A stretch of 33,000 bases of DNA from Octopus sinensis (GCF_006345805.1 NW_021835476.1:1571-34570); one strand, 5' to 3'; shown: positions 546 to 31,519, counted from the first letter of the stretch. The notes: generated by a model from the letters alone, not told the origin. Made by a program: numbers and translations.

Positions 546-2232
546 TCACTGCCCCTCTTCCATAACCCTCTTGGATGGAAAATGAGGGACTGACTTCTTT
601 CTTTTAGTAGTACTCTGGGGTATTGAAGAGTCCCCTTCTTGTCGATATGTCGAGAAATCCCTCAAAACTAAACAAACCGACCAAACCTGTTAGGCTGCCT
701 TTTCCCCATTTGAGCCTGCCCTCTGCCTGTCCCACTAATCCTACGAGTCTACAACTACTTAATCAACTCCCTACAGAACTCTCCTCCAATATCCTCAGGC
801 GAGTCTCCAGCATTGCTCGATGTTCCACCCCCAACGAGGACTCCGCGTCCTCCTCACACAAGGCATCCACTCGGGAGGCAAGGGAGACCTTCGCTGCCAA
901 CATCCTCGATGCCTTTCCTTTCAATTTGGCCGAGGTTTGCCCGACGAGTTGTGACGAATAAATCAGTCCATACTTGGGCGTATTCCGATTGCCCTTCAAT
1001 GCTAAGAAAAGTGTTTTTTCTGCTCCAAAAATCTGAATTGTCGAGGAAGGCTGCTTGGCTAACTTCAAGAGGGATCCCGCATGGGAGATAAGACGGGCTC
1101 CCACCTGCTCCCCCACCAGAACTGTCACGTTGGGGGCCACAGCCATCATCCGATTGCTCAAATAATCAGTCAGATGAGTCCTGTACTCAATCAATTGAAT
1201 TATCTATAAATGTTAACAAAATCAGTCAACTGTGAATATAATCAATTCAAATTAATAAAGTATGAGATTTACCTGATTACATAACTCTTTTATACTAGTA
1301 AGGTCATCTGGTGAGCACTCCATGCCGATTGTTGTGTTGACTGAGGCCTTGAGATGTGCCTCGTCTTCCTCACTGAGCCAACGAGACAAATCTGCCTCTC
1401 CCAACCCACTTCGATCACCTTCAAATAAATCAAAAATACTAACCAAAGTTATAAATAAGCTGGGCATACAATAATGGATCAGGAACAAGCTTAACTAACT
1501 CTGGAAAGTGCCATCCATACCACTCTCTAGCCCGCATAACCAAATTATTGAGTTCCCTGTCCAGTTCATCCAACAAACCTACAACAAAATAAATTTAAAT
1601 AATTATTTATTTAAAAAATAAATTAATTATTAAATAATTAATTAAACTAATTAATTACCAATAGCATGAATAATCATAATGTCAATTTTGTCGGCCGAGA
1701 ATTTCAATTTGTACCGACAAAGCCCGTGAGTAAGGCCAAGAGAAGTGGCCGAAAGTTCATTGGAATGGACATCCAGCAGACTGGGGAGTTGTGCCCTTAT
1801 ACAACGAAACAATTCCACCACAGGGGCCCCCCAGACACAGTCCACAGCCACTTTATTCTGAGGATAAATTGACCAATCAGAGACCTTTATTAATGTCCCT
1901 AAACGTTGGTCGGCCACTGCGAGCTTCTCGTTGGATTGGGAGACTAATTTTAAGAGACGTTTCAGTTTTTTGTTCATTCGGCCTTCAATAAGGGAGGATG
2001 TGGCTGCAACAGACTCGGAAAGGTCCTTGAATTTGACAAAATACTTCATTTCCATGCTTTGGTGTTATGTGGTGATAAATGTACAATTTACTGGCTGTTT
2101 CTGGAGTGCTAAAATATTTGTACAGATCATCCACTTTTTGGAGTTTTTTTTCTTTTAATATCTTTATGTTATTTTTGTGTTAAATACCTTAAATATTGCA
2201 TACCCAGCGGATGTTTCAAAGAGTACCAACAT
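546..2232 (-). CDS. NOP58: Nucleolar protein 58 (box C/D snoRNP core), 9 exons
   Basis: Spliced product starts MLVLFETSAGYAIFK. It contains [45 protein letters not shown], the NOP domain (AVAPNVTVLVGEQVGARLISHAGSL...TPKYGLIY) and RISGTG. Introns are at 2187-2162, 2084-2057, 1884-1858, 1658-1579, 1443-1419, 1272-1204, 774-749 and 686-661, all GT-AG and frame-restoring. Confidence 0.95.
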
Positions 2233-2512
2233 GGACAATATTACAACTAATGTGTGTTTTAAACTTTATTTTAAATTTATTACTTTTATTTCAAACTGTT
2301 ATTATTTATAATAATAAAACATTATAAATGTTAATATTAGTAGAACTCATTTGACTATCTTTCAAGTGAGTTACTGAGTACATTTACTTGGACACCAAAT
2401 TTCACTGATTTATAAAAGAATCTTAAAAATAAATAATTAGAATTATTAATTAATTTAATAAATAGAAACTAATTAATTTTAATATAATAAATATTTAAGT
2501 GTATTCAAGTGG
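2233..2512. promoter_or_regulatory. AT-rich divergent spacer between the NOP58 and calcineurin B start codons (probable bidirectional promoter)
   Basis: 280 bp, very AT-rich, between head-to-head ATGs at 2232 (-) and 2513 (+). Promoter function is inferred from position only. Confidence 0.5.
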
Positions 2513-3157
2513 ATGGTATTCTTTTGTTGTAGAACAAATAGGGATCAACATTATCCTCAATATCCTCTACATCTCAATGTACAGCCACATCCCCCACCCT
2601 ATAGTCGACCGTGATGAAATACTCCGAATAGGCCGAAGATTCCGTAAAATAGACGTGGATGGCTCAGGCACTCTCTGCCTGGAAGAACTATTCAACCTCC
2701 CCGGCCTGGAATCCAATCCCCTCGTCCGCAGAGTCCTCGAAGTATTCGACACAGACAAAAACGGAGTGATCGATTTCAACGGTATAAACCCATCGATTAC
2801 CCACTAAGAGTTCATAAACGGCATTTCTCTATTCTGTGTAAAGGACACGGACATTGAGGCCAAATTGGCATGTGAGTAAGCATACTAATTCAGTCGCCTT
2901 TAAGATATATGACACGGACAATGAGGGGTACCTCACTCGGGAGGGAATGTTCAGAGTCCTCAAGACCATGGTGGGGGATAACTTGAAGGATGACCAACTC
3001 AGACAGGTCATTGACCGTACTATTGTGTTTGCTGACACTGATTGTGATGGAAAGTTGTCCTTTGAGGAGTTTTGTAATGTAATGGTCTTCCTTTCATTCA
3101 CAGGCTGTTCGACATATTGGCATTGACCAACAGATGGTCATCAATGCTGATATTTAA
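2513..3157 (+). CDS. PPP3R1: Calcineurin B regulatory subunit (4 EF-hands), 6 exons
   Basis: An ATG-only first coding exon and introns 2516-2541, 2579-2604, 2782-2808, 2872-2893 and 3079-3103 give [37 protein letters not shown]...[31 protein letters not shown]...FAFKIYDTD...[57 protein letters not shown]. This is collinear with calcineurin B, including the MGxxxS myristoylation motif. Confidence 0.9.
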
Positions 3158-3249
3158 CACTAATATACTTTAATTATTTATTAAATTATATTTAATTTAT
3201 TTTTGATTAATTTTTATTTAAATTTTGTTTTTGTGGATCAATTAGTTAG

Positions 3250-3760
3250 CCTTGTGGTAAGATGGTTCCAAGGTAGCGAATGATTTTAGCAAGATCCGGC
3301 CGAGTAGTGGCTACATATATTAGAATAGACGGACTAGGGTGAGGGAGTCGTTGGAATACTCTGGGGGGACTTTAATAGCTCAATGGCCTAGGGATAATTC
3401 GAATAGAACACACAACTCATTATCTGAACTTAACCTTTGGAATAGGCCATTTAGAATATTTAAAATTATTTTTTATGATAAAGATAGTCTGTATTACATA
3501 TTTAGGTAAAAGGAATATCATAATTAACTATATAATTACCTGCATATAAAACTAGATTATTATAAATACAATTTTATTGTAGCGTCCATCCTGGTGTGTT
3601 ATATTCTGGGTTTTTGTCTCACAATTACTTTTGTGGATTCAACATTGGCCCTACATTATTGTAGAGCTTCCTGGGTGTAGAGTTTTCTACTCCCCGTATA
3701 CTCTACTACATTAACTATAAAAAAAGTTATTGCATGACAATTCTATCAAATTTTCCATAT
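3250..3760 (-). CDS. Possible small multi-exon gene, structure unresolved
   Basis: GC-richer patches are separated by candidate GT-AG micro-introns on the minus strand (e.g. 24-nt GTCCGTCTATTCTAATATATGTAG and 23-nt GTAATTGTGAGACAAAAACCCAG). I found no unique frame-consistent model and recognised no homology. Confidence 0.25.
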
Positions 3761-4287
3761 TGTTATCATACCTATGCTAATGTAGTTTTAGACAGTTTAT
3801 TAATTCATAGGTTAAATTAACGTGAATAAAAATCAAAATTTAGTTTTTAGAAAATTTAGAAAAAGTCTCTCAGTCATTCCCGAGTATGTTGTTCAGGGAT
3901 TAGTCAAAAGTTATTGTAAAAAGACAAATTTTGTTATTTACAGAAAGACAGACAACAAACAGTGTGCCCAAATTGAGAGAACAAAAGATTAGATAAACCT
4001 TTGAACTAAAATAATGAGTAGTGATAAATATTAAAAGAATGAATAACATAAAAGTGATAGGTCGTGAAATATATAGCCTGCAATTGAAAATACTTATTTC
4101 AGAAAATTAGCAAAAAAGGCAGAATGTCCTAAAAATTGGTACTTTAAAAAAAACAGTTTTTCATTCAGTGATAAGGCGTATATACCCACAATATTTTAAC
4201 AAACACGCTTATTGATTAAATTTGGATTAACCACAAATAGGCGTATAAATGGTCAAATAAATCCACGTAGTTCGTTAAATAACAAAA

Positions 4288-4976
4288 ATGGTTCATTAAA
4301 GCAACTTATCATGTTTAGTTCAACTACGACTTTCTGGACCAAGAAATAGACCTGGGAATAACACCAGACACATTAGGACTGAGTACAATGCCCTCCCAGA
4401 ATAAGCAAACAGACATGTTTTCAATCAACGAAGAAACCGGTAAGTGAAAGTACTCATTAACAGGGGAAATTATGCCCACCAAAAACTACGAGGAGTCCTA
4501 CGTTGATATCCTCTAACACTCTTAGTTCACTCACATCCCTGTCCCCGACATCCGCGATAGGAGTTGGGGGAACCTCACCTACAATCCCCTTCCATACGAC
4601 CCCTCCACCAGGACGGACTATTGGCAGGGGTACTGGCCTATGGAGTCGGTCTTCAATGAGGTCCCTCAGTTGACGGATGACATAATAAACTACGACAAGA
4701 CCGAATATAAGGAGTTTATTAGGAATAACTCGTTTACTGAACAACAGGTGAAGCAAATGAATGAAGTCAGACGGAGAGGTCGAAATAGAGTATTCCACGT
4801 GCTTTATAGTCTAGATGGCTGCCAGGACATGCAGGGACCGGAAGAACTGTATTATTGAAACCTACAACAAAGAAATTGAGGTTCTTAAGACGAGAAAGCA
4901 CAGACTTGAACAAGAAAGTATGATTTTAGCCAAGAAGGTTCATGATCTGGTTCATCTCCATAAATCAAGGATTTGA
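4288..4976 (+). CDS. NFE2L2: Compact CNC-bZIP transcription factor (Nrf2/CncC-like), ~195 aa, 5 exons
   Basis: Introns 4291-4318, 4440-4463, 4502-4525 and 4790-4814 give M|FNYDFLDQEIDLG...FSINEETGEI...DDIINYDKTEYKEFIRNNSFTEQQVKQMNEVRRRGRNR|MAARTCRDRKNCIIETYNKEIEVLKTRKHRLEQES...*. The product has a DLG motif, an ETGE motif, the CNC domain, a basic region matching RRRGKNKVAAQNCRKRK and a zipper. The symbol denotes the family, not strict orthology. Confidence 0.88.
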
Positions 4977-5089
4977 TAAATTACGTTTATATGTTTTATT
5001 TCTAACACATTTCCATTTAATTATAATCTTAAATAATATATTAATAAATATTTTGTTTACAGATTTAGTCTGTTGTGGTCATTTAAGGA

Positions 5090-7388: not shown

Positions 7389-8320
7389 ATGAAACTATTG
7401 AGCGCATGTCTTGGAAGTGCTACTGCATTATTATTAGTAATTAGTCGACCCACAGAGCAGTTTAATGCACAACATCAATCTAAAAGTAATCTTTTTTCCT
7501 CAACATTATAAAACTAGCCGACCACAAATTCTACGGATTACCAGCCAATCATACAATCCAACGTACATATTCCTATCATACAGTTAACTACGACACAACA
7601 AAAAAAATATCTGATTGGTCTCAATATTTAATAACAAAAAATAGCTCACAAGGTTTGTCTAATGTTATAATTCTCAAAGGCGAAGCAGATAGAAGAAACT
7701 GCAGGTTTCAAAATGACGAAAATATTTCAAAATATTTTTCGACCCCTGCTGACTACAAAAGAAGTGGATATTCAAGAGGACATCTCAGTCCATCGGGGTC
7801 ATTTAAATTCGATCAGGTCAATGACTTGTTCTATTTTAGACTGGAATGTGCGACACTTTTTATTTGACGAATATTGTCCCTCAGAATATAAGACAAAATT
7901 CTGGCATTTGGAATAATTTGGAACAATATCTGAGAAAGGAATTAATTAAAAAATTTGACAATATTTGGGTGGTAACTGGCCCGGCATTTCTACCCTTTGA
8001 TTCCGATTCAAAGGAAATTCGAATAAAAGTATTTTGAATTGTTCATTCACGAGGTCATCGGAAATAATAAAGTTTGGGTTCCAACCCACACATATAAGGT
8101 TGTTTTGTGTCAGTCTCAGACTGATACTTATTTGGGGGCCTTTCTGATTTTAAATGATTCTAGTGGATATCCAGAAGATTATAAGGACAACATGGTCAAA
8201 CAGTTAAGTATAAATTAGGTCAGCATTGATGAATTGGAACAAGATCTTGGATTTGATTTTTTTCCGGAACTGGATAGAACAGATGTCAAAGATTTACGTG
8301 ATTATCTGAAAATGGTTTAA
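7389..8320 (+). CDS. EXOG: EXOG-type mitochondrial nuclease (EndoG family, SRGH active site), ~266 aa, 6 exons
   Basis: Introns 7486-7517, 7653-7679, 7817-7839, 8029-8053 and 8195-8218. The product has an N-terminal hydrophobic segment, then YGLP, GEADRRNCRF, SGYSRGHL, TFYLTNIVPQ, NSGIWNNLE, WVVTGP, VPTHTYKV, LGAF and FFPELDR. SRGH rather than DRGH, and these flanking motifs, match EXOG. Confidence 0.85.
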
Positions 8321-8427: not shown

Positions 8428-9243
8428 ATTTAATTTATTTAGGCAATCTTCGAAGGCCTGCTTCCTGTCTCCAATCAACACCGTGTCGCTTGCCTCCGTG
8501 CAGGTCACTGTGAAAGCAGCGGTGTCTGGTTAAAGGCTCTCCCTCTCCCTTCCATCGGGAACCTGTTGGACAAGGAATGCCTAAGAATTGCAATCTCCCT
8601 CCGTGTCGGGCTGAAAATCTGCCAGACGCACAAATGCCGTTGTGGGGGAACTGTTGACGAGTACGGTTTGCATCCCCTCGCTTTCCGGCGGAGTGCCGGT
8701 CGTGCCCCCCGTCACAGTGAACTCAACTCAGTCATACAGAGAGCCCTCGCTTCAGCAGGCATCCCGTCAATCCTTGAACCTGTTGGATTGGATAGAGGGG
8801 ATGGCAAACGCCCTGACGGCATGTCCACCTTCCCCTACGAGCAGGGGAAATCCTTATTTGGGATTCTACCTGCTCGGACACGTTCTCGCTGGGAAATCTC
8901 GCTCTGTCCGCCGCCAATCCTGGGCACGCTTTCAGGCAGGCCGAGGAGCGAAAGATTCTCAAGTACGGCCACCTCTCCAACTCGCTGCTCTTTACTCCAA
9001 TTGCTGTGGAGTCCTCCGGGATCTTCGGTCCCAAGACACTCCGCTTCCTTCGCTCGCTCGGTCGACGGATTTCAAGGACTAGTCACGATCCAAGAGAGTT
9101 TTCTTGGCTCCTGGAACGTCTGTCGATTGCTGTGATCCGAGGGAACAGCTTCGCGATTCGCGAGGCTGGTCGGGTGTCTCGTGAGGCCTTTAATTAACTT
9201 AGCTATCTTTAATTTCTTTCTTGCTTTAAAAAAAAAAAAAAAA
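8428..9243 (+). mobile_element. 5'-truncated CRE-like non-LTR retrotransposon (Zn-knuckle + restriction-like endonuclease end), copy 1
   Basis: Encodes CRCG...HPLA, EPVGLDRGDGKRPDG and (after a frameshift at ~8853) WDSTCSDT...AEERKILKY...RLSIAVIRGN. It has a short 3'UTR, an A16 tail (9228-9243) and an 11-bp TSD aattatttgga (8417-8427 / 9242-9252). Confidence 0.9.
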
Positions 9244-9883: not shown

Positions 9884-10888
9884 TTAAAGGAGAATCAGTA
9901 TGCACAGAAGTGCACCAGCCATAAAATGAAGACTCCTATCTACTATTATATATTACGCCCTCATTCCAAAAAGGGAAGGGGTAGAGTAAGCAATATACCT
10001 TTTCCGATTACGTCAACATCGACCTCTGGGTCATTATTTGTATTATTTCCAGCATCAGAATTAGTTTCTGGGCCTCCATTCGTATTGATCGTATTTTCTT
10101 CATCTTCAGAATTAGTTTCTGGGCCTCCACTCGTATTGATTGTATTTTTTTCATCTTCAGAATTAGTTTCTGGGCCTCCAATCGTATTGATCGTATTTTC
10201 TTCATCTTCAAAATTAGTTTCTCGGTGTTCACTTGTATTTTCTTCATTTAGTTTCAATGCCTCCAAAATAGTTTCATATCTTAATTCTCTGAATCTTTGA
10301 TTCAATTCTCTACTTGGGATAATATTTCTATAATTACAAATAAGTACATTACAATATATTTTCCGAATTTAAAATACTGTTAGTGTCATCACTATCTTCA
10401 AAATTCATTATTTTGAGTAATTTGTATATGATAATTCCAGGTTTATATGGCTTATATTAAAACACTGAATATACTTGACATAGGGTATCGTTAAACATTT
10501 CATCGTCTATAAATGTGTTATATTTACCTTAACCATTCGTTGAACTAGTAAGGAATACATTTAATCTTCCAACTCTATTAATAACATCATATCCTTCATC
10601 ACTAGCTGAACTACAGTTTGACTGACACAGAGTTCAAACTCAACAATCTCAATTGAAATATCTTCTCCTTGTTTGACAAACGAAATATTCACCAATTGAG
10701 ACAGTGACTACAGCAATTAAATAATCATTTAACATTTTTGACAACATCCAACATGAACATCTGAATTAAAATAAAAATAGATTACTTTATTCTCATCATA
10801 TTTCACCTTTAGTTCACCGAGACCTATTTGATGTCAATAAAATAATACTTGATGTGTATTGTAGCACCAACAGCACAGTCAGAATCAT
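9884..10888 (-). CDS. Orphan secreted/surface protein with signal peptide, acidic 17-aa repeats and a hydrophobic C-terminus
   Basis: Seven canonical introns (25, 25, 26, 23, 27, 24, 25 nt) join into one frame: MILTVLLVLQYTSSLGELKVKYDENKMFMLDVV...NISF...SNCS...FNDTLCQPYKPG...[EDEENTINTxGGPETNS]x3...DPEVDVDVIGK. The last exon is ambiguous (stop at 9884-9886 or 9895-9897). Confidence 0.7.
10057..10223 (-). repeat. Coding minisatellite, 51-bp unit, 3 full copies plus a partial copy
   Basis: The unit agaattagtttctgggcctccattcgtattgatcgtattttcttcatcttc starts at 10057, 10108 and 10159, with a few substitutions between copies. Confidence 0.95.
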
Positions 10889-11579: not shown

Positions 11580-12480
11580 TCTTGCTTCCCATATACATCC
11601 GAATGAAATGTAGCACTTATTCACCCAATTCTGAAGTCCGGGAAGCCTAAGGACAATCTTGACTTATATAGACCCATCTCTCTATTATGCGTCCTATCTA
11701 GAATCCCTGAGAAACTAATACTAAAACTAATCCAATCATCTCTCCACTTGTTACATTCCAACATGGTTTTAAGAAAGGACCATTTAAATCTTCATATCTG
11801 AAAAAAACTCTAATTTTATCTACGAAAGCTTCAAAACCAAGCCTATCTAAAAAAAATTCTTTGCTCAGTAGAAATACAAAAGGCGTTCGATTCAGTCACT
11901 AAAAAGAATCTTTATTGAGCGACATTCCAATCCCTACTCACCAGGACGACATCTTACTCTTCTATGCTGATGATATCATATAAGATCAACGGACCAAAAT
12001 CCACTCAAAGCAATCCAAAGACTTCAGAGAAACATCCACAACATGTTTTTCTGCAATGTACAAACCAACTGAATCTAAGCTCCGAAAAATGCATAAACAC
12101 TCTATTCACGACAACAAAAAATTATCCAACTCCGAAATCAATGTTATTTTAAAAGGAACAAGAATTTAGCAGATAAATACTAGGTGTGATCTTTGAAACT
12201 AATTCTCATTCTCTAAGAATATTGACAATCATATAATTAAACTATCGAGAAGATCAAACTTTTTAAATTCCTTTCTTGGTTCATGCACGGGGATACAACA
12301 ATCCTGATTTAAGACTATATACAAGCAAATATGTCAAGCCCTCCATTGCTTATGCTTGTGGTGGCTGGAAATCATTTCTGGCCCCCTCCAAAATCTGCAA
12401 AAGATCTCGAACCTACAGCTGAAGTCTATCTCCAGTTTTACTAAACGGATTATAAAGCCAAAAGCTTTTGAAAAGCTTGT
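11580..12480 (+). mobile_element. Degenerate LINE RT remnant (Jockey/I-like)
   Basis: Fragmented frames read PILKSGKPKD...YRPISLLCVLSRIPEKLI, FQHGFKKG, KAFDSV, FYADDI and IYKQ...SIAYACGGW, with many stops and frameshifts. Confidence 0.65.
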
Positions 12481-12661: not shown

Positions 12662-14025
12662 CAGTACGACCCCGCCCCAATAGAAAAGTGCCCCAAATAT
12701 AGAGGTTGCCCCTAAGATAGAGGGTATATATAATTTTTACATTTTAAAAGCAAATATCTGTATTTTTTAATAATAAAATATGTTTTTTCGTATTAAAATA
12801 TGTTTTTTCGAATAAGGAAGTTTCAAGATCATTAATTATTCTCATTGAATCTTTTAAGTCGGACCCTTCAATTTCATCATTTCCATTATACAAAGTATCA
12901 TTATCCTCAATTCCGTTTATTTCAAGATCCATTAAAGCTAAAACATGCTTATCAATTAATTCAGATTTTTTTTTGAATTAATTTCAGGAAAACATGTTCT
13001 CTGTTCGTTTATTTTCATCCAACAATTGACAATTGTTATTGTTGTTACTCGACTCCATGCTTCTCCCACATATGCGATTATTTGCCTCATATTAATTTTC
13101 AATAAAGTCGAATAGTATTTTTTAAGATCATCAGGTATTTTTAGGAAATTTAAAAAATGATAAGTTTGAATATTCTTGTAATTTGTGGCACGGTGCATTA
13201 TCCATAAGAATCAAAATTTTTCTGTTTTTTTGAGCCATTTCGAAGTTTATCTTCTGTAACCATTTATCGAAAATATCAATCGTCATCCAAGCATTTTTGA
13301 TGCAGTGTACAAAACCTAAAAATAATCTAATACAACATACTCCATAATCTTCAGTTTTTATATTTTTTAAGCATCTTGGGGATTTGAATTTCCCGATAAC
13401 AAGGAGCTTTAATTTCTCACCTTCAAGGCTGCAGCATAAAAGAACCGAAACTCGTTCTTTACTTTTTGTTTTACAGAAACAGTCATCATTCGAAGATACA
13501 AATGATTTATATGAATTCTTTTTGACAAAAAGGGATGTTTCGTCACAGTTGAAAATATCTTTTTTCTCGAATTTATCAAATAAATTGTCGTAATCATTAA
13601 AAAAATCTTCGATCTTATCTTTGTCGCACGAGTTCTTTTCTCCGGAAATTACTTTAAACAGTAATTCGTGACGTTTTTTAAAACGATCCAACCATCCATT
13701 CGATGCTTTAAAATTATCGAAGTTAAGGTTCGATGCAATTTTTTTTGCAACAGTTTTCAAGAGAAATCCTGAAACTGAAATCCCATCTTCTCTCAAATTT
13801 TTAAAAACTTCAAAGACTAATCGATCAATTCAATAATAAATTTTAATATTATCGATTGAAAAAGTGCCCTAATAAGCGGGGTTCCGTATTTCGAATTTAA
13901 GCTTCTTATTGGTCAAAAAATATACAAAAACTGAGAAATCATTCAAAATAATTTTTATTAAAAAAATCGCCCCAAAAACAGAGGGTGCCCCAAGGCCGGG
14001 GTTTTATTGGGGTGGGGTCGTACTG
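12662..14025 (-). mobile_element. pogo/Tigger DNA transposon, internally deleted (1364 bp)
   Basis: TIRs are CAGTACGACCCC(G/A)CCCCAATA, with TA TSDs at 12660-61 and 14026-27. ORF 13131-13796 carries the CENP-B HTH (FKASNGWLDRFKKRH) and DDE motifs (IFNCDET, LILMDNAPCH). Confidence 0.93.
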
Positions 14026-16376: not shown

Positions 16377-16932
16377 TTTTTTTTTTTTTAAACGTATTTA
16401 ACTAACAATTAACACCGAAAATAGTTAAGTTCCAGCGGCGAGGACGCAGTGTGCGTTGCCCCGAACAATGGCCAGGCCGATGCGCTGGCGGAACCAGAGG
16501 CTCTCTCTCGAGTCCTTGAGCCTTCTCCCGATGGACTGCCCGACCTCTTTGAGGAACGAGTCAGTCTCCTTTCCTGCAACTCCAGCGGTCTCCAGAGCGA
16601 TTGCCGTAACGCGGTAGCGGTCCGCGAGCGAAGAATATTTATGTATTTTTATCTTTTCGGCGTGGTTTGCAGCCGAACAAGGGTTTGCCGCAGAAGAATG
16701 GATCCTCGATTTCGAAAAGGTATCCACAACGGTGACATCCCATACAAGGGCCTTCCCCGACGAGTACGGGAATATTGTCATCCCGTCAGGCCTTTTGCCA
16801 TCTCCCCGATCGAGTCCGACCGGTTCGAGGAGGCACGAATGGCCCGCCATTTCGAGACCGGCCTTTACGATTTCATTGAGGGCCTTGTGTCTGTGTTCCC
16901 TGCCTGCGCTCCTCTTGCAGGAAAGTGGGTGC
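16377..16932 (-). mobile_element. 5'-truncated CRE-like retrotransposon, RLE end, open frame
   Basis: Reads CKRSAGREHRHKALNEIV...EPVGLDRGDGKRPDGMTIFPYSSGKALVWDVTVVDT...AEKIKIHKY...RQRIGLAIVRGNAHCVLAAGT*. It has an A15 tail and a 12-bp TSD agtttacaaatt (16365-16376 / 16933-16944). Confidence 0.93.
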
Positions 16933-17818
16933 AGTTTACAAATTGACTTTAGTTTAATGACTTTAGTTTAATATGTTTTTTTTTGTTTAATAAACATTTT
17001 ATATAAGTTCATCTTAAAAGTTTAGTTTCCAGTCTTGTCTTGATATTAAGTCAGCAAGACGCGCTGGAATCACTTTCTCGAAGATCTACAGAGCCAGAGA
17101 AAAATCAAATCGGACTAGTCACCAAATACCAAAAGGGTTACTTGAGAAAATTGGGTGTAGATATCTCTCTACTCCTAATAAAATGAAATAATCTGAACCA
17201 GCTTCCGAACACCTTTAGATTTTTGACAGATTCCAACTTTTCTTTGGAAATTTTAATTTGCTCCTGGACCAGTAGCTTATAAATTAGTTCTCAATTCTGT
17301 CAAAAGCTTTACTTAGTATCAGTCATAATTAAGGAATTTCTTAAAAGTTTAAATTGTGCTCAATTAATATTTTTATAATTTATATATTTTTGTGTAGTAT
17401 TTGGTGAATTTATGATTCCGGTTGGTCATCAAAACGCGAGGCTCTGGGATTTGAATTTCGGTTGGGGAAATTTTTGGTACTTTTAATACCTTATTTGTGT
17501 ACGTTTTTAGTTAAATATTTAAAATAACCCTAAAATATGATTCTGTCTAACATGGAACTTATTTGTTTTAGAATTTAATAAACTATTATAAAAATTAGCT
17601 ATTATCTTTAAAAAGTTGGAAGAAAAACCAAATTGAGAGTGGAATCAATGAGACGATTTACATTAATTATTTTTCGATTTTCTGTAAAATAAAAATAAAA
17701 ACAGTGATTTACAGTTTTAAAAAACATAAATGACATATAAAAACATAATTGCCTGCCAATATGACAATTAATTAAAAATTTAGTTTAAATACTGGAAAAA
17801 TGGAAAATAATAAATAAA

Positions 17819-18404
17819 ATGTTCTATTTTCTAATTCTATCAATTTTTGTGCAAAGTGCTCCAACATCAAACAGTAATTCATTTTATTTCAGTTTAGAAT
17901 GTTTTAATGGAAAATGTTATATTTTTGTGACGGATAGACTAAGTCGACAAGATGCACAAAAAGTTTGTAAAGAAAAAAAAGGCTCACTCGCAAATATAGA
18001 CAGCAAAATCACAAATAATTATATTCATGGTAAATACAAAAACAATTTATTTCAGAAAATTTTATAAAAAACGCAAAATCAAAGTTTTGGATTGGAGTAA
18101 ATGACATCCAGAAAGAAAACGAGTTTTTGGATTCTTATGGAAATAAACAAGTAATTCAAATTTTTTAATTCAGACCTTTTTTAATTGGCATACAGGTGAA
18201 CCTAATAATTTTTACGATGAAAACTGTGTTGAGATATGGATTCCTAGTGGAGTCTGGAATGATCAGAGTTGTAATGATAAATTACCATTTTTGTGTGAAA
18301 TTTTGGGTTTTTATTTTAAACTAACTATAATAGACATTTCAAGCAACCCAGAAATTGAAATAAGTAACCAAGTTGGAAAAAGAAAAAACGTATGCGATAA
18401 TTAA
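17819..18404 (+). CDS. Secreted single-domain C-type lectin (EPN/WND)
   Basis: A signal peptide is followed by CYIFV..RLSRQDAQKVC...GSLANI, then (26-nt intron) FWIGVND, then (23-nt intron) WHTGEPNN..DENCVEI....WNDQSC...PFLCE. Two further in-frame micro-introns (24 and 27 nt) are possible. Confidence 0.9.
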
Positions 18405-20968: not shown

Positions 20969-21527
20969 GTAATTATATAAAGACAAACAAAGTCAAAGAT
21001 GGATACATTTGTATTTATGCACATTTGTGGCTTCAAAAAGATCAAAGGTCTCAATACACACTCAGTTCAATCAATTGTTGAGACACAGAGAATGAAATCA
21101 AAGTGGAAAATAATGAAGCGCAAACAAAACAACCAGACATTTTGTAGCTAGTATCAATGTTTTGTAGAATAGTCCTTTTTCCTCTAACTGTCATCCCTCT
21201 ATTTCAACTAACGCATAGTTTGTTTTCAACTAACGCAATAAGGTGATAGACTGAAATTTTAACTAAGTTTGTTTAATAACGATTTCTATATTCTAAATTT
21301 GTATGGATGCTTTTTGACAACACCCAAACTAGAATTGGTAACATTGTTGTTAGTCGTGATATCATCCATAAGCAGCAGGGTAGTTGTCATGCGTTTTTGA
21401 GATTTTTCAATGTGAATTTAGGAACGTTTCGTTAACATTCGGCTGACCATAAAATTTGAAAAAAAAACATTCAAAAATTCCGCTTTGTCGAGATTTTTAT
21501 TGGATGTAAATCAATAAATGATATTTA

Positions 21528-22358
21528 TTAAATATTCAAATTTGGCTGGATCAAAATTTGTGCCGATTTCAACCCTTTTCCAATCAAAGTTAGATCTTGA
21601 TGCACGAAGGTTGCTAGAGTGATTCGTGGTTTCCTCGGAGATTGTTCCGGATGGGAGACGTAGTGGTGTTCCATTGCGAGATTTGCGGGAGTTTTCTTGT
21701 CCATTCTTAGGATGTGACCGAATAAGCCCATCTCTTACTTCTTATTTCTTCGTCCAACGAGTGTACATTGTACTTGGAGTAGAGAAGTTTGTTTGATATG
21801 CGTTTTGGCTAAAAGATTCTTAGGATGTGTGTTTCAGCTGCATTCTGTGGAAGGAATTCAGATTTTCCATTTCGTGCACTGTGAAAGAGGAGGATTGTAC
21901 AATAAGACTGGTTTTACGAACATATTGTATAGTTTGATTTTTAGAGACGCGAAATTTTTTGCCTCTCAACCATATGTTGTTTAATCTTTTAAGCGCGAAA
22001 GTTGCTAGTGATTTTCTTCGTATCATGTCTTGTGTATCTCCTAAGAGAGTGCCAAGTTTCTTGTATGCCTCCATTTTTCCTCGTGTCGTTTGTCACATCG
22101 CCTCACTATAGTGTATTCTGGTTTTCTCAGTGTGATTTTTAGAATGATTTTTCAAAAGTGTTGGCCAATTTGTCTATAGTACCTTCTAATTGGTGTCTGT
22201 TGCCGTGAAATCTATGTCATCTGCAAAGATGACTTCTTTAATATGTCTGGGGATATTATTCCTGGCATTCGTAGGGGTCGCTCCAGATATACGATGAATA
22301 AGACGGTGCCCTTGTTTGTTACAAATACTCTGAATTTCTGATTTTCGAGCTGGATAAA
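21528..22358 (-). mobile_element. RTE/RTE-X-like LINE, 3' half (RT 4-7 and C-terminus)
   Basis: Contains VLFIVYLE, FADDIDF, YKKLGTLLGDT...IRRKSLA, LFGHILRMDKKTPANLAM and RKPRITL. Confidence 0.85.
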
Positions 22359-22360
22359 TA

Positions 22361-24146
22361 CAGTAGACTATTCATTTAACGAAAATGAAAATTGAGCATT
22401 CGTTAAATGAATTTAACGAAAAAAATTGTTTAATTAAAAATGTGTCATGTAATCGGTATTTTAGGTTCCTTCTTTTATTTTTGCCAATATATTTCTCAAA
22501 TTTGTAATTAGGTGAAATGTTCACCAGATTATTGCAAAAAATATTTTCAATATTTTCCAAATATTTAAGTGCATCTGCATAACCAATGGGATTGTCATTT
22601 GTGCTATCTATTTCTTCATGCCTTTTTTTCTTCCTCACATTGTATTGTATCAAGATACGCGTTTTCTTCCTTTCGCAGACGACAGTGCACAGACAGGAAA
22701 CTCAATCATAATTTCACTTTATTATCTTTAATTGTAAGGTGATTTAATTTAATACCTTTTTCGTCAGTGGATTCTTCAAGTATTTTTTCATCTATCTTCG
22801 CCCAATTATTTAATGCCTTGTTAAAGCAATTTTTGATAGTGTCCACTGTGACTTCGTTCCAAGCCTCAATAATTAAGGTAGAGCATTCACTAATTTGAAT
22901 TTGGTAAGTTCATCTGTATATGACAATGTTCCTATATTTGTTCCCATACTCTCAATTTCTAGTCATTTTCCTTTTTATACAACGATTTAAATGAATGCAC
23001 AATCCCTTGATCAATTGGTTGAATCTCAGATGTTGTCTTTGGAGGAAGAAAATACAATTCGATATTACTGAATTCGACATCAAAATAGTGAACTGGCGCA
23101 TTATCTAAAAGAAGCAAATCTTTCTATTTTCCACACTCATTTTGGAATTTAACCGTTCAACCCAGTTTTTAAAAATTAAACTGGTCATCCAAGATTTATT
23201 GCTATTTCCATATTGAATCCCAAGATTATTCATATTAATATTTTAAACCATGAGGATTTTTGAATTTTCCGATTACCAACGGATGCTCTTTATCTCCTTC
23301 CATATTTGTGCATAATAACAGTGTTATTCGTTTTTAGAAAATTTTCCTGAAGCCCTTGATTCGGAGTCAAGAACTAATGTTTTTTTGGAGTACATTTGAA
23401 AAAAGGGCAGTTTCATCGCAGTTGTAAAATTTTTCGATCCATATTTTTTTAACATGGCTGCAAAGCGTTCATATGAATCTAAGCAAAACGGGATCCACTA
23501 TTGTTCTTCTCCAGAATCGTGAGTGTTTTTATTTTATACTCTTCCTTAAAGGGTGAAATCCATGGGTGAGATGCTTTGAAATTTTCAATATAAAATCGTT
23601 GAGCAATTTTGAGTGCCATTTCGCGTACCATTTTATTAGTTATGGTGTGATTACAGAAACGTTTGTTCTGAATCCATGCATATAGTGGTTCATATATCTT
23701 ATCAGTACAACTTTTAATGTAATATTCTTTTTTGTTTGTGACGCCTTGATCCATACAATTGCATTTTCTTCAACGTTGAATTGATCACTCCAATAGGCAT
23801 ATTAAACCGCTGAGCCAAATTTTCTTGAGTAACATCAGGATTATTTTTCTTGAATCAATAACTTCCAGTTTTTGTTGAATTTGATAAGTTTTTCTTTTTT
23901 TCTTCATATTGTTCAACCTTGCACACATGGTTTACTACAAAGAAATAGCGAGGAAAAATTATTTTAATTTTATCAAAAATTTTAAGTTTCGTTATTTAAA
24001 TATTCGTTAAATATATTTAAATATTCACTAATCAAAGAAAAAAATTTTATTTTTGAATTTATCTAAGGAAAAACGTAAAAAAATATTTTGACTTTCGTAA
24101 AATGAATATTTTCGTTAAATTTTTTTTGTAAATGGATAGTCTACTG
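22361..24146 (-). mobile_element. Second pogo/Tigger transposon (1786 bp, decayed), inserted into the LINE
   Basis: TIRs are CAGTAGACTAT(T/C)CATTTA, with TA TSDs at 22359-60 and 24147-48. The HTH CENP-B region (LYAWIQNKR...FKASHPW) is in ORF 23479-23754. Confidence 0.9.
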
Positions 24147-24148
24147 TA

Positions 24149-24870
24149 GTTGAGTGGAGGAGAGTAGATAACAATTATTCTGATGCAATCTTTTTTGAGT
24201 AATGGCGTTAATATTTGTATCATCTTAATTCTACTGATTGAGTCGAATGCTTTAGATAAGTCGATTCCCATTATGTGATACTCCTCTTTATATTTTTGGC
24301 ACGAAGCACACATCCATTTGTGGCTCCAAACAGCATCGGAAGTGATCTTCCAGGGACAAACCCACTTTGGCTGGGTCCGATAAATTCACGTAATGGGCCT
24401 TTAATTTTCTCCAAAGCATTAGTGATAAATTTTTACGAATGAGTTGAGTAGTATGATTGGTCTTAAGCTGTTTAGCTTTCCTTTTTCCTTCCCGCTTTAT
24501 GTAAGGGAATTTATTTTCCGATTCCGATGTTAATTCTGGAGTGTTCTTTAAAAGTTTTGTAAGTAATCAGTTTTTGGAGCTCTTCAGGAGCATATTTCAT
24601 GAGCTCTGCATTAACATTATCTGGACCTGGAGCTTTTGAGTTGTTTAGTCTGGTCACAGATTTTTTAACTTCCGTTAAAGTAATTTCTTTAGATAGCCTT
24701 CTGGGCCCTCCATCGAAAGGGTAAAGGGTTTCTTCGTTTTCAAAATTGAAATATTTTTCAAAGTGGTCGGCTATAGTGTCTGTGCGTTCCTGGTTCTTGT
24801 AAATAGTTCTTCCGAGTTTATCATGAACTGCTGGGTTTTCCGATTTCATGAACTGCTAAAAATCTTTGAT
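24149..24870 (-). mobile_element. RTE/RTE-X-like LINE, 5' half (linker and RT 0-3)
   Basis: Contains EITLTEVKKSVTRLNNSKAPGPDNVNAELMKY and GIDLSKAFDSISR. The RT motif order resumes on the other side of the pogo insertion. Confidence 0.85.
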
Positions 24871-26691: not shown

Positions 26692-29216
26692 TTAATGGTA
26701 CGAATTTCTCAGTTCGTTGATGATCTTCAGGAGGGCGTCAGAAATGTGTCTTTGAGACACAGGGAATCCTTCAACGTTCGCTTGTTCAATAAGAGAAACG
26801 ACTGTCCGTCAAAATGCATGGATCTCAGCACGGAAGCCACATTTCGGCATTTCGTAGACTCGATGTACGTTATCAAATCCTCACAGGACCAGTCCCGTGG
26901 GTCTTTTAGTAGGGAATTTTTATTTTCCTCAGAAAGTGGCAGAGTTTGAATACATTCAAGTTTTCTTTTAGATTTGGAGCAGATCTCAGGAATTGAGAAA
27001 TCTTTTTTACGTTGTTTGGATTTTGGAATTTTTGGGTTGCCTTGTTAATTTAATTTATTTAAATATACATAGTAAACAAGGTTTTCCTGATAAATTGACG
27101 AGGGAAATTAAATTCGGACAAGCTTTTAATTTTAGACACAATTTGAGTAGAAAGTGACTCAGTTGTTCCGCAGAATCACAGACCTCAAACTTGAGAAAAC
27201 TGTCGAATTTACTGTTTATTAAGTACATAAATTCAAAAATACTTTTTTACGGATATCTGTATTGAACTGGTTAAATCTCCGAAAACACTTAAAATTTCTT
27301 TCAGACGTTTAAAATTTGATGTACATCCAAGAATATACTCATATAGTGACCTAAGGACCAAAGAAATTGGCCCAGGTCCAATTATTTTGGGAATTCGAAG
27401 TATTTCTGACACATACAAGTACTTTCCGGAGTAGCACTGAGCATTAATGAAGATCTCAGGACTCCAAAGGTCCTCAATTCTCCTAATTTCCACGTGGTCG
27501 TCCAACATATTTGATAAAAGAGCTTTCAACAGTATACTTTTATCTTGTTCACATAGTTGTGGCAATTTTGGCTGACTGAGTGGATAATCGTTTGATTCAG
27601 CCCACCCAAAGGGGAGGACTTGAGGACTGTAAACTGAATAGATCAAAGGCGATTCCTCGTTTATTTTGACAAAAATTAAATGTCCAGCAACTTTGAGGAT
27701 TGTGGCTGGGCAGACACTTTGATTATTCGTAGGATTAATCACTTGAAGCTTCATCCCGGGTTCGAATCCAGGCTTTTTCTTAAACTGAAAGAAATAGTTT
27801 TTTATTAATATTTACTGTTCTTATGAACGATTTTGGAGCTTTTTCAAGTCCCTTTCCAATCCCTCTGTGTTTACTCCACCGAAAAAGTTTTCTGGTCCCT
27901 TTAACATGAGACCATCAAGCACAACCATCAGACAACGTAAGAGGCAGTTTGTGTCTCACAGAAAACTCAACAGGAAGGATTCCATCAGAAAGAGAATAAA
28001 AAGATTCAATTTTTGTACCAGATTCGATTGAATCAATTTTAATGCACGTGTTGTCGATTATTTCGCTAATTTTTGCTGGAAATAGAATCTGTCTGGTCTT
28101 CAAATCCAAAGCCTCGACTGCCATTCCAACTTTCAGTTTATGAACGGTTACTTCAAAGGGAATCTAAACCAAGTTAGAGGTCCTCGGCTACCTCAAATAG
28201 AAATGCTGGCACAGAAAGCACTTCTGTATTCCGAAATAAAAAAAACACAAATAAAAACCCTAAAGTTATCTCAAACAGTTTGACTCCTTCAAAAATAAGT
28301 ATTCAGTCAACATACCTTCAATTTTGGGGAGTCCATATTCAATATTATTCTGTGCACCATACCCAACAGGGCAAAGTCTATGTGAAGTGCAAAAAATCCA
28401 AAATTCAGAGAAATTTATATCCGGACATATCCATTTTAACAATAAATATCCTCCAACATTTTTTATGATCTTTGCAAACCAAACCATAGACAAGTGCCTT
28501 CTCCTATGCTTTACTTCCATGTACTTTCCCACAAGACCCTGAGAGCTCCATGTGAATATATTTTTCTAAGAATAATGCGAGAGAAATACTTTTATAAGGA
28601 ATTCATCTTTAAAGGAATAACAATTCGTCAAAGTCTGTGCAATCTCTTCTTGCATGTTTTTGTCATCCATGAACGGAGGATATCGATAAAGTAGGCCGTT
28701 TTCTCCTCCGTGGTAAAGTTGTTTGATTTTCGGTGAGTCAATTTTGATGGAAAAAGTTTTTTTGTCCCCTAAAAACTGAACTTTGATCAACGGATATTTT
28801 ATTTCGAGAACTTTGATGAACCAAACAGCGTTAGCTTCGACTTGATACTCATAAATTTGGTCCCCGTTTCTCAGAGGGCATTCCACAGCATAAGCAATAT
28901 GAGGAAATGCATTTGGGGAATACTCGAGAGAGTTAAATTCTTTTTTATTTTCTAAATCTTTGAAGGAAGTATCAGGCGGCAACTTCAAAGGTTTCATTTC
29001 TATAAGCACGTGATCAATTTGACTTTGTTCGAGCTTTGTCACATAGGAGGAAATATCATGAAGAACAGTTTTGTCTTTAAGAAATTGTTTTATGATCTTT
29101 GCCAATGAAAAATTGTGGAAGGTTTTGTCAGATTCGTTGACAAGATCAGGAATACTGAATTTCGAATTTTTTGTTGTTGTATGATTTTCATTGGCAGTTA
29201 CAGGAGATTCGTCCAT
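26692..29216 (-). CDS. SFMBT: SFMBT Polycomb-group protein (MBT repeats + SLED + SAM)
   Basis: Eight 24-31 nt introns link MBT repeats (VWFAKIIKNVGGYLLL...FW...RLCPVGY; LKVGMAVEALD; FEPGMKLQVINP...CPATI...PFGWAESNDYPL), SLED (IFINAQCYSGKYL...IPKIIGPGPISLVLR; LCLKLKACPNL) and SAM (PRDWSCEDLITYI...FDGQSFLLL). There is a frame problem near 26752 (see findings). Confidence 0.88.
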
Positions 29217-29341
29217 AGAATCAGGTTTATCTCGACTGATAAAATTAGAATAAAAAAAGAATGAGAATATACATTAATTATTGTTTAATCCGTTAATACA
29301 ATATCATTTCTGACTTACTCGACCTAATTACTGTTCATTTA

Positions 29342-31246: not shown

Positions 31247-31519
31247 ATGCTATTGGAAAATAGACATTCTGTAGTAAGACTCGTAGATATGTCGGAATCC
31301 CTTCAACAAGAAGCTATCGAATGTGCCAGAAGAGCATTGAAGCAGAGTGATTCGGAGAGGGACATTGCTATGTTTATTAAAAATGAGTTTCATCTCCTGC
31401 ACAGTCCGATTTGGCAATGTGTGGTGGGGCAGGAATTTGGGAGTTATGTAACTTGTTGTAAAAATCATTTTATTTATTTTTATTACGGGCGACTTGCTTT
31501 TCTTTTATATAAAATATAA
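31247..31519 (+). CDS. Divergent dynein light chain LC8-family protein, intronless
   Basis: 90 aa, collinear with DYNLL1: DMSESLQQEAIECA...ERDIAMFIKNEF...PIWQCVVGQEFGSYVT...HFIYFY.G..AFLLYK. Confidence 0.9.
   Translation: MLLENRHSVVRLVDMSESLQQEAIECARRALKQSDSERDIAMFIKNEFHLLHSPIWQCVVGQEFGSYVTCCKNHFIYFYYGRLAFLLYKI

What the first reader, a model, noticed from the sequence alone, without database searches (positions are those of the whole stretch)
4288..4976. Minimal ~195-aa Nrf2/CncC that keeps both KEAP1 degrons
Seen after splicing four 24-28 nt introns: QEIDLG (DLG at residues 12-14), NEETGE (ETGE at 40-43, with the Gly codon split by an intron) and an intact CNC-bZIP. Established: human NRF2 is 605 aa, with DLG at 29-31, ETGE at 79-82 and seven lysines between them that KEAP1-CUL3 ubiquitinates. 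Here the spacer is 25 residues with a single Lys (K30). No DSGIS-type beta-TrCP degron or Neh3 VFLVPK-like tail is visible, and only a short aromatic/acidic patch (DYWQGYWPMESVF) could act as an activation domain. Inference: this is a naturally stripped-down hinge-and-latch oxidative-stress sensor. ORF-based annotation misses it because both degrons lie outside any long ORF.
Basis: partly seen in the sequence, partly recalled or inferred. Interest (0 to 1): 0.75.

Follow-up and report, generated by a model that had tools for sequence, protein, structure and literature searches.

The report
Miniature Nrf2-like stress regulator gene
A real five-exon gene with 24-28-base introns, almost certainly from a dicyemid parasite, encodes a 195-residue Nrf2/CncC-type transcription factor, about a third the size of any comparable relative found, that still carries the ETGE motif and a weaker DLG motif through which KEAP1 controls Nrf2 in other animals.

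Summary
Removing four GT-AG introns (28, 24, 24 and 25 nt) from 4288-4976 (+) gives a 195-aa product with QEIDLG at 9-14 and NEETGE at 38-43. The spacer is 25 residues with one Lys (K30). The C-terminus is an intact CNC-bZIP whose best solved relative is human NRF2.

The three internal introns are the only frame-restoring solutions. Two neighbouring genes, calcineurin B and Nop58, have homology-verified introns of 22-28 nt. Introns this short, plus motifs the literature reports only in bilaterians, point to a dicyemid such as Dicyema.

- **ETGE:** the match is strong, with no equal in the window's six-frame translation.
- **DLG:** the match is weak alone. The flanking helix-1/DIDLID part is not conserved, and it is translated only if a 3-nt ATG coding exon is spliced on.
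- **Size:** twelve reference CNC proteins with both motifs are at least 561 aa, with spacers of 47-146 aa and 2-13 Lys. This protein is an extreme outlier.

Not testable here: transcripts, KEAP1, small Maf or CUL3 in the genome, and binding.

Verdict: a genuine, extremely reduced Nrf/CncC orthologue. Its identity is well supported, but the two-site hinge-and-latch mechanism is only inferred.

The parts
4244..4249 (+). TATAAA, 39-44 nt upstream of the proposed ATG; a possible TATA box
   Evidence: This is weak evidence because the flank is about 27% GC, so TATAAA is common by chance. If it is functional, the ATG at 4249 overlaps it and ATG 4288 would be the first AUG of the mRNA.
4288..4290 (+). 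Coding part of exon 1: the ATG only (context aaaaATGg)
   Evidence: This is inferred. Every start option uses acceptor 4318. ATG 4288 with a 28-nt intron is the only option whose intron length matches the neighbouring genes.
4291..4318 (+). Intron 1, 28 nt, GT..AG, phase 0
   Evidence: It contains an in-frame TAA.
4319..4439 (+). Exon 2: residues 2-41 plus the first base of Gly42. Holds QEIDLG (4340-4357), K30 (4403-4405) and NEETG (4427-4439).
4440..4463 (+). Intron 2, 24 nt, GTAAGT..AG, phase 1, splitting Gly42 of ETGE
   Evidence: unique solution. Unspliced reading gives NEETGK followed by a stop. Spliced reading gives ETGEIMP, which matches the family pattern ETGE-x-x-P.
4464..4501 (+). 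Exon 3: rest of Gly42, Glu43, then IMPTKNYEESY
4502..4525 (+). Intron 3, 24 nt, GT..AG, phase 0
   Evidence: unique solution. It contains in-frame stops.
4526..4789 (+). Exon 4: residues 55-142. A region without detectable homology (55-98, including DYWQGYWPMESVF at 4616-4654) is followed by the CNC domain and the start of the basic region (from 4658).
4790..4814 (+). Intron 4, 25 nt, GT..AG, phase 0, inside the basic region (RRRGRNR|MAARTCRDRK)
   Evidence: unique solution. The alignment to NRF2 runs across the junction without a gap.
4815..4976 (+). Exon 5: residues 143-195 and the TGA stop. Rest of the basic region, then a leucine zipper with Y159, L166, L173, L180 and L187 at heptad spacing.
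   Evidence: The long helix 151-194 has pLDDT up to 92.
5043..5048 (+). AATAAA, 67 nt after the stop and before the next gene's ATG at 5090
   Evidence: Its function is inferred.

Best explanation
This is a genuine five-exon gene for an extremely reduced orthologue of the Nrf/CncC (NFE2L) transcription factors. The host is a bilaterian with introns shorter than 30 nt, most likely a dicyemid. The protein keeps only the two ends of a normal Nrf. At the N-terminus is a Neh2 core with a high-quality ETGE hairpin motif (NEETGE) and a minimal DLG motif (QEIDLG). At the C-terminus is a complete Neh1 CNC-bZIP for DNA binding and dimerisation, presumably with a small Maf. About 300-600 residues that separate these parts in other animals are reduced to 55 residues of predicted disorder. 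The NHB1 ER anchor, Neh3, Neh4/5 and the Neh6 DSGIS degron are absent. The most likely mechanism is inferred, not shown. KEAP1 would hold the protein through ETGE and direct its CUL3-dependent degradation, and oxidative or electrophilic modification of KEAP1 would release it to activate ARE-type genes. DLG would act at best as a weak second contact. With a 25-residue proline-containing spacer and one lysine, ubiquitination geometry must differ from the vertebrate lysine-rich helix.
For: Gene model:
- The same genome uses such introns. Calcineurin B has 27, 22 and 25 nt introns and aligns without a break to human CnB at E=5e-54. Nop58 has 26, 28 and 25 nt introns.
- The gene is boxed in by calcineurin B, which ends at 3158, and an ARHGAP1-like gene starting at 5090. 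The 1.1 kb upstream is 24-35% GC with no coding-like ORF.

Family:
- Pfam bZIP_Maf matches at 3.8e-10.
- Solved relatives rank NRF2, then BACH1, SKN-1 and NF-E2 p45.
- 260 hits in 1.84 billion representatives had E<=0.001; of the 150 listed, all but two spurious repeat proteins match only the CNC-bZIP, residues ~99-187.
- The basic region reads RRRGRNRMAARTCRDRK, and four Leu plus one Tyr sit at heptad spacing.

Neh2:
- The ETGE block scores 11.9 bits, and no position in the window's six-frame translation equals it.
- BLASTP against a 561-aa Nrf2-like protein gives three collinear matches: DLG at 9-15 vs 10-16, ETGE at 35-55 vs 58-78 (E=0.017), and bZIP (E=3e-13).
- AF2 draws a hairpin at 35-37/44-46 around ETGE, at low confidence.

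Literature:
- DLG/ETGE arose in the bilaterian ancestor, cnidarian Nrf proteins lack them, and myxosporeans lack Nrf (PMC11721785).
- Presence of DxETGE in Nrf correlates with presence of Keap1 in the same species (PMC6092318).
- Introns under 30 nt are reported among animals only in dicyemids and myxobolids (PMC13644364, PMC6543705).
Against: - There is no transcript, orthologue or KEAP1 evidence. The organism's proteins appear absent from the searchable databases.
- DLG is statistically weak alone (BLASTP E=2.0).
- Helix-1 of the extended DLG degron, reported to bind Keap1 more tightly than helix-2 (PMC8121781), is not conserved.
- The conserved Asp two residues before ETGE is Asn here.
- The spacer has one Lys against 2-13 in the references. 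A published survey says all Nrf2 proteins have at least two (PMC6155405).
- The spacer is 25 aa against 47-146 aa.
- The first coding exon of 3 nt is inferred.
- My codon-usage test does not discriminate, because the antisense ORF scores higher than the sense exon.
Confidence: 0.6

Rival explanations
1. One-site Nrf. The gene is real and KEAP1-regulated, but only ETGE works. QEIDLG is either a decayed remnant or is not translated at all, with initiation at Met25 (ATG 4388-4390) if intron 1 is not used. Control would then be by simple tethering rather than hinge-and-latch.
For: The DLG exon has no in-frame ATG before Met25. DLG scores only 7.4 bits, and three window positions score as high. The helix-1/DIDLID flank does not match, scoring -1.3 bits. 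The spacer is short, has two prolines, and has one Lys.
Against: QEIDLG sits 8 residues from the modelled N-terminus, the same place as in a 561-aa Nrf2-like protein, where Q is at residue 10. It is upstream of ETGE in the right order. An AG acceptor lies exactly at the start of the open frame, with an ATG|GT donor 28 nt upstream, which is the local intron length. Exon 2 is 42% GC against 27% in the flank.
Confidence: 0.2
2. KEAP1-independent factor. The lineage has lost KEAP1, as nematodes and acoels have. The motifs are vestigial or serve another partner, and the protein is a constitutive or otherwise regulated CNC-bZIP.
For: Dicyemid genomes are heavily reduced, with 5,012 predicted genes and only 5 bZIP_1 genes (PMC6736024). 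KEAP1 could not be looked for. The loss of lysines and the shortened spacer fit relaxed constraint on ubiquitination geometry.
Against: In surveyed animals, loss of Keap1 goes with loss of DLG/ETGE from Nrf (PMC11721785, PMC6092318). Here ETGE and its flanks (SINEETGEIMP) remain close to consensus in a protein that is otherwise only about 35% identical to relatives even in its bZIP. The DIDLID element used by WDR23 is absent.
Confidence: 0.12
3. Mis-modelled or dead gene: a pseudogene, or a fragment of a longer gene whose other exons were missed.
For: There is no expression evidence. Residues 44-98 have no detectable homology.
Against: All five exons stay open only in the proposed frame. Splice sites are exact and unique. 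The flanking genes leave no room beyond 3159-5086, and that space holds no coding-like sequence. The DNA-contact residues and the zipper are intact.
Confidence: 0.06
4. Chance resemblance in non-coding DNA.
For: None beyond the shortness of the motifs.
Against: The CNC-bZIP match has E around 1e-9 to 1e-10. The ETGE p is 5.5e-6 per position. The order DLG, ETGE, bZIP is collinear with real Nrf proteins.
Confidence: 0.01

Closest known systems
Vertebrate NRF2 (NFE2L2), especially the N-terminally short form that begins just before the DLG region
   Same: The order is N-terminal DLG, then ETGE, then C-terminal CNC-bZIP. There is no ER-anchoring NHB1 domain. The basic region keeps the N-x2-AA-x2-CR contacts and RRRG. 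Q of QxIDLG is 8-9 residues from the N-terminus.
   Different: The protein is 195 aa against about 560-605 aa. The spacer is 25 aa with two prolines and one Lys, against 47 aa of lysine-rich sequence (6 Lys in P0109). ETGE to basic region is 93 aa against about 390. There is no Neh3 VFLVPK, no Neh4/5 and no Neh6 DSGIS. Asp77 is replaced by Asn. Helix-1 of the extended DLG degron is not conserved.
Protostome Nrf/CncC (Drosophila CncC, octopus Nrf and the invertebrate representatives P0019, P0040, P0093, P0123, P0128)
   Same: This is the single Nrf-type gene expected in a protostome. The ETGE flank (S-I-N-x-ETGE) resembles the protostome pattern Y-T-I-D-x-ETGE more than the vertebrate Q-L-D-E-ETGE. 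Neh4/5 are absent, as reported for protostomes (PMC6155405).
   Different: Those proteins are 776-1157 aa, carry a long N-terminal extension before DLG, and have spacers of 48-72 aa with 2-10 Lys. The protostome spacer is said to be relatively long (PMC6155405). Here it is the shortest seen.
C. elegans SKN-1
   Same: It is a reduced CNC factor in a fast-evolving lineage. Its CNC domain aligns at E=2.3e-7.
   Different: Per the literature, SKN-1 lacks the zipper and DLG/ETGE and is controlled by WDR-23 through a DIDLID element (PMC6155405, PMC5428976). The window protein keeps the zipper and ETGE and lacks DIDLID.
Other ETGE-type KEAP1 clients (the DxETGE/ESGE consensus in MCM3, p62 and others)
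   Same: It shares the core E-T-G-E with acidic flanks (PMC6092318).
   Different: Here the motif sits in an Nrf orthologue with a CNC-bZIP, so it is not a convergent client.

Membership tests
CNC-bZIP transcription factors (Nrf/Cnc/NF-E2/Bach/SKN-1) | CNC domain immediately N-terminal to the basic region | tested here: met
   Residues 100-152 align to the CNC domains of NRF2, SKN-1 and NF-E2 p45, with E from 4.7e-9 to 3.3e-6. Pfam bZIP_Maf matches 105-184 at 40.6 bits against a cut-off of 22.
CNC-bZIP transcription factors (Nrf/Cnc/NF-E2/Bach/SKN-1) | Basic region with RRRG-K/R-N-K/R and the N-x2-AA-x2-CR DNA-contact signature | tested here: met
   The sequence is RRRGRNRMAARTCRDRK, and it aligns across the intron 4 junction without a gap.
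CNC-bZIP transcription factors (Nrf/Cnc/NF-E2/Bach/SKN-1) | Leucine zipper | tested here: met
   Y159, L166, L173, L180 and L187 sit at heptad spacing. AF2 predicts a helix at 151-194 with pLDDT up to 92.
Keap1-regulated Nrf (Nrf2/Nrf1/CncC type, Neh2 domain) | High-affinity DxETGE motif | tested here: met
   NEETGE lies at 38-43. The block scores 11.9 bits, unmatched in the window, with p=5.5e-6. BLASTP gives E=0.017 against an Nrf2-like protein. The Asp two residues before the motif is Asn.
Keap1-regulated Nrf (Nrf2/Nrf1/CncC type, Neh2 domain) | DLG motif within the extended DLGex degron (helix-1 at 19-25, helix-2 at 28-30, helix-3 at 34-37 in mouse Nrf2) | tested here: inconclusive
   QEIDLG (helix-2) is present in the expected place. 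The 10-mer scores 7.4 bits with p=5e-5. The 20-mer that includes helix-1 and helix-3 scores -1.3 bits. Translation of this motif depends on the inferred ATG exon.
Keap1-regulated Nrf (Nrf2/Nrf1/CncC type, Neh2 domain) | Several lysines between DLG and ETGE as ubiquitin acceptors (seven in mouse; at least two in all Nrf2 surveyed, PMC6155405) | tested here: not met
   There is one Lys (K30) in 25 residues. The 12 reference proteins have 2-13.
Keap1-regulated Nrf (Nrf2/Nrf1/CncC type, Neh2 domain) | Spacer long enough to bridge the two Kelch domains of a KEAP1 dimer | not testable with these tools
   The spacer is 25 aa against 47-146 aa in the references. The organism's KEAP1 is unknown, and no complex modelling was available.
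Keap1-regulated Nrf (Nrf2/Nrf1/CncC type, Neh2 domain) | KEAP1 orthologue (and CUL3, small Maf) in the same genome | not testable with these tools
   Only this 33-kb window is available, and none of its ORFs checked against Pfam showed a BTB or Kelch domain. Searches for the organism's proteins found nothing.
Nrf1/CncC subtype | N-terminal NHB1 ER-anchoring region before the Neh2-like domain | tested here: not met
   The protein starts 8 residues before QEIDLG, and no upstream coding sequence was found.
WDR23-regulated SKN-1/NRF2 degron | DIDLID element | tested here: not met
   There is no D-x-D-L-I/L string. The N-terminus reads MFNYDFLD where the references have (M/L)DLI(D/E)(V/I)LW.
Vertebrate NRF2 accessory domains | Neh3 VFLVPK, Neh6 DSGIS, Neh4/5 | tested here: not met
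   There is no DSG or VPK. Only 8 residues follow the last zipper leucine. Residues 44-98 have no Pfam match.

The most novel reading that the evidence does not exclude
This is the smallest natural KEAP1-controlled Nrf. In this reading both motifs of a 195-aa protein engage a KEAP1 dimer across a 25-residue, non-helical, single-lysine spacer. That would mean the lysine-rich helix and the conserved DLG-ETGE distance are not required for two-site recognition and degradation. Alternatively, dicyemid KEAP1 has a different dimer geometry. Either way it would give a natural minimal scaffold containing only Neh2 and Neh1.
Probability: 0.3. Interest if true: 0.6.

Novelty: new variant of a known kind. 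Interest (0 to 1): 0.5.

Why it matters
Nrf2-KEAP1 is a central and clinically important stress pathway. Its two-site model rests on a conserved distance between DLG and ETGE and on a lysine-rich helix between them. This natural protein keeps only a Neh2 core and the DNA-binding domain, halves the spacer and has one lysine. It would test which of those features are really needed, and it shows how far a parasite can shrink a master regulator.

It also shows that ORF-based scanning misses genes in genomes with introns under 30 nt. No paper in the searched library links Nrf2 or Keap1 with dicyemids.

The value is limited because the organism is not an experimental system and nothing functional has been shown.

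Tried and rejected
- **Database relatives or transcripts of the protein.** The word-indexed search of 5.8 billion proteins found nothing. The full HMMER scan found only distant CNC-bZIP matches, and its top two hits, P0001 and P0002, are repeat-protein artefacts. The metagenome scan found nothing.
- **Identifying the organism through exact or near matches of window proteins.** The 215-aa MBT-gene ORF and the LC8 protein are not on record. LC8 has no word-sharing candidate. The organism is therefore inferred from intron size plus the taxonomic range of the motifs, not matched directly.
- **HMMER profiles of the two short motifs against the six-frame translation.** These were underpowered. The DLG exon was the top hit but only at E=0.096. 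ETGE ranked second because the intron cuts it. I replaced this test with position-matrix scoring.
- **PDB search with the 40-aa exon 2 peptide.** It gave no hit at E<=10.
- **Codon-usage log-odds trained on neighbouring genes.** The proposed frame is best in every exon and the upstream windows score low. However, the antisense ORF 4457-4798 scores higher than sense exon 4, so I do not rely on this test.
- **Exhaustive enumeration of multi-intron models.** This timed out twice and was replaced by a junction-by-junction search.
- **Rfam.** No RNA family was found in the window.
- **Myxozoan origin.** Rejected, because cnidarian Nrf proteins lack DLG/ETGE and myxosporeans lack Nrf (PMC11721785).

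Full report
**What is in the sequence**

Region 4288-4976 on the + strand has no long ORF. The only ORF of 90 aa or more there is antisense (4457-4798) and has no Pfam match.

The three forward frames hold recognisable pieces: FNYDFLDQEIDLG...INEETG, then IMPTKNYEESY, then a CNC-like stretch ending RRRGRNR, then MAARTCRDRK and a zipper. The four short sequences separating these pieces each occur once and are GT...AG: 4291-4318 (28 nt), 4440-4463 (24), 4502-4525 (24) and 4790-4814 (25).

Removing them gives 588 nt in frame and a 195-aa protein. DLG lies at 12-14 and ETGE at 40-43. The spacer is 25 residues with a single Lys (K30). The Gly42 codon is split by intron 2.

**Is the splicing model credible?**

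For each of the three internal junctions, the proposed intron is the only single GT-AG intron of 18-200 nt that joins the flanking frames without a stop.

The neighbouring genes show that this genome really uses such introns:
- The calcineurin B gene at 2499-3158 (+) needs introns of 27, 22 and 25 nt. It then aligns without a break over 155 residues to human calcineurin B at E=5e-54.
- Nop58 on the minus strand (2232 down to about 760) needs introns of 26, 28 and 25 nt between conserved segments.

The 5' end is the weak point. The DLG exon opens exactly after the AG at 4317-4318 and has no in-frame ATG before Met25. DLG is therefore translated only if an upstream ATG is spliced on. Three options exist, and all use acceptor 4318:
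- ATG 4288 with the 28-nt intron.
- ATG 4249 with a 67-nt intron, which gives the same protein.
- ATG 4039 with a 265-nt intron.

The first option fits the local intron length and has a good context (aaaaATGg). A TATAAA at 4244-4249 would make it the first AUG, though that is weak evidence in AT-rich DNA.

The gene cannot be much larger. Calcineurin B ends at 3158, and an ARHGAP1-like gene (CRAL_TRIO_2 plus RhoGAP) starts at 5090. The 1.1 kb upstream is 24-35% GC with no coding-like ORF. An AATAAA follows the stop by 67 nt.

**What the protein is**

- Pfam bZIP_Maf matches residues 105-184 at E=3.8e-10.
- Among solved structures, the best match is the human NRF2 CNC-bZIP (7x5e, E=4.7e-9, residues 100-185). 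BACH1, SKN-1 and NF-E2 p45 follow.
- A full HMMER scan of 1.84 billion representative proteins gave 260 hits at E<=0.001. Of the 150 listed, apart from two repeat-protein artefacts, all align only to residues ~99-187 at about 30-40% identity.
- The DNA-contact signature (RRRGRNRMAARTCRDRK) is intact, as is a zipper with Y159, L166, L173, L180 and L187.
- A single-sequence AlphaFold model gives confident helices only for the CNC-bZIP, with pLDDT up to 92. It predicts disorder for residues 1-100, apart from a low-confidence hairpin at 35-37/44-46 around ETGE.

**Are the degrons more than chance?**

Twelve of the 150 listed hits carry both Q[DE]xDLG and [ED][TS]GE. I built position matrices from these twelve.

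- **ETGE.** The window's block (MFSINEETGEIMPTK) scores 11.9 bits. None of 27,754 six-frame positions in the window reaches that score, and the random p is 5.5e-6 per position. The residues after the splice junction (E-I-M-P) fit the family's ETGE-x-x-P pattern, which independently supports intron 2.
- **DLG.** The 10-mer scores 7.4 bits with p=5e-5, and three window positions score as high. The 20-mer that includes the helix-1/DIDLID and helix-3 flanks scores -1.3 bits.
- **Collinearity.** BLASTP against a 561-aa Nrf2-like protein gives three collinear matches: QEIDLGI against QDIDLGA at almost the same distance from the N-terminus (E=2.0), ETGE (E=0.017) and bZIP (E=3e-13).

ETGE is therefore solid. 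DLG is credible because of where it sits, but only its core survives.

**How unusual is it?**

| Feature | 12 reference proteins | Window protein |
|---|---|---|
| Length | 561-1157 aa | 195 aa |
| DLG-ETGE spacer | 47-146 aa | 25 aa |
| Lys in spacer | 2-13 | 1 |
| Pro in spacer | 0-11 | 2 |
| ETGE to basic region | 392-729 aa | 93 aa |
| Residues from the RRRG motif to the C-terminus | 103-197 aa | 59 aa |

None of the 63 hits shorter than 300 aa has either motif.

A published survey states that all Nrf2 proteins have at least two lysines between the motifs and that the distance is tightly conserved in vertebrates (PMC6155405). There is no DSG, VPK or DIDLID string.

**Organism**

The window holds metazoan genes:
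- An MBT plus SLED Polycomb-type gene.
- LC8 dynein light chain.
- A C-type lectin.
- An EndoG-like nuclease.
- Calcineurin B, Nop58 and a RhoGAP.
- Many transposon fragments.

Among animals, introns under 30 nt are reported only in dicyemids (median 27 nt) and myxobolid myxozoans (PMC13644364, PMC6543705). DLG/ETGE are reported to have arisen in the bilaterian ancestor, cnidarian Nrf proteins lack them, and myxosporeans lack Nrf altogether (PMC11721785). The window's GC content and repeat load also fit Dicyema japonicum (36.7% GC, 49% repeats; PMC6736024).

A dicyemid origin is therefore the best inference, but it was not confirmed by a direct match.

**Mechanism and limits**

By homology, the protein should bind ARE-type sites as a bZIP dimer. 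KEAP1 should recognise it through ETGE. In surveyed animals, retention of ETGE in Nrf tracks retention of Keap1 (PMC6092318, PMC11721785), which predicts that KEAP1 is present here.

Whether the vertebrate hinge-and-latch operates is open, for three reasons:
- Helix-1 of the extended DLG degron, reported to bind Keap1 more tightly than helix-2 (PMC8121781), is not conserved.
- The spacer is half the shortest reference spacer and is not helical.
- Only one lysine is available.

Transcripts, KEAP1, CUL3, small Maf and binding could not be tested with the data at hand.

**Verdict**

This is a real, extremely miniaturised Nrf/CncC orthologue and a new architectural variant of a well-known family. 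Its identity is well supported, and its regulatory mechanism is inferred. No paper in the searched library connects Nrf2 or Keap1 with dicyemids or myxozoans. Interest is moderate.

Noticed in passing
window 2499-3158 (+): Calcineurin B gene with three homology-verified introns of 27, 22 and 25 nt (2782-2808, 2872-2893, 3079-3103). It is about 60% identical to human CnB, at E=5e-54.
   Followed up: yes
window ~760-2232 (-): Nop58 gene (starts MLVLFETSAGYAIFK; Nop domain at E=2.4e-51) with GT-AG introns of 26, 28 and 25 nt. It is transcribed divergently from the calcineurin B gene.
   Followed up: partly
window 5090-~6450 (+): An ARHGAP1/Cdc42GAP-like gene (divergent CRAL_TRIO_2/BCH domain, then RhoGAP) starts 114 nt after the Nrf stop codon. 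It is also split by very short introns.
   Followed up: partly
window 7840-8215 (+): Two adjacent ORF pieces match consecutive parts (98-151 and 152-192) of the DNA/RNA non-specific endonuclease profile. This looks like an EndoG-like gene.
   Followed up: partly
window 8443-9194 (+) and 16425-16968 (-): Two islands of 55-58% GC stand in a window of about 34% GC. Their ORFs share the peptide LEPVGLDRGDGKRPDGM and have no Pfam match. They are probably fragments of one retroelement family in opposite orientation. They are not similar enough at the DNA level to be picked up as repeats.
   Followed up: partly
window 13134-13829 (-): A pogo/Tc5-type DDE transposase fragment (HTH_Tnp_Tc5 plus DDE_1). 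Several reverse-transcriptase-like ORF fragments lie elsewhere: 11607-11798 (+), 21514-22092 (-), 24062-24855 (-) and 32269-32514 (-).
   Followed up: partly
window 10033-10236: A tandem repeat with a 51-nt period and about 3-4 copies at 87-94% identity, lying inside an ORF with the repeated peptide ...SSSELVSGPP.VLIVF...
   Followed up: no
window 17789-18401 (+): A C-type lectin domain split over two ORF pieces (Lectin_C profile 3-34 and 63-106).
   Followed up: partly
window 27236-29273 (-): A Polycomb-type gene with MBT repeats and a SLED domain (Sfmbt/Scm-like).
   Followed up: partly
window 31247-31519 (+): A single-exon LC8 dynein light chain (Dynein_light, E=1.1e-29). It is unusually divergent for this very conserved protein, and the word-indexed search of 5.8 billion proteins returned no candidate at all.
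   Followed up: partly
window 4457-4798 (-): A 113-aa antisense ORF lies opposite exon 4 of the Nrf gene. It has no Pfam match, yet it scores higher than the sense exon on a simple codon-usage log-odds test. That is a caution against using such scores in this genome.
   Followed up: yes
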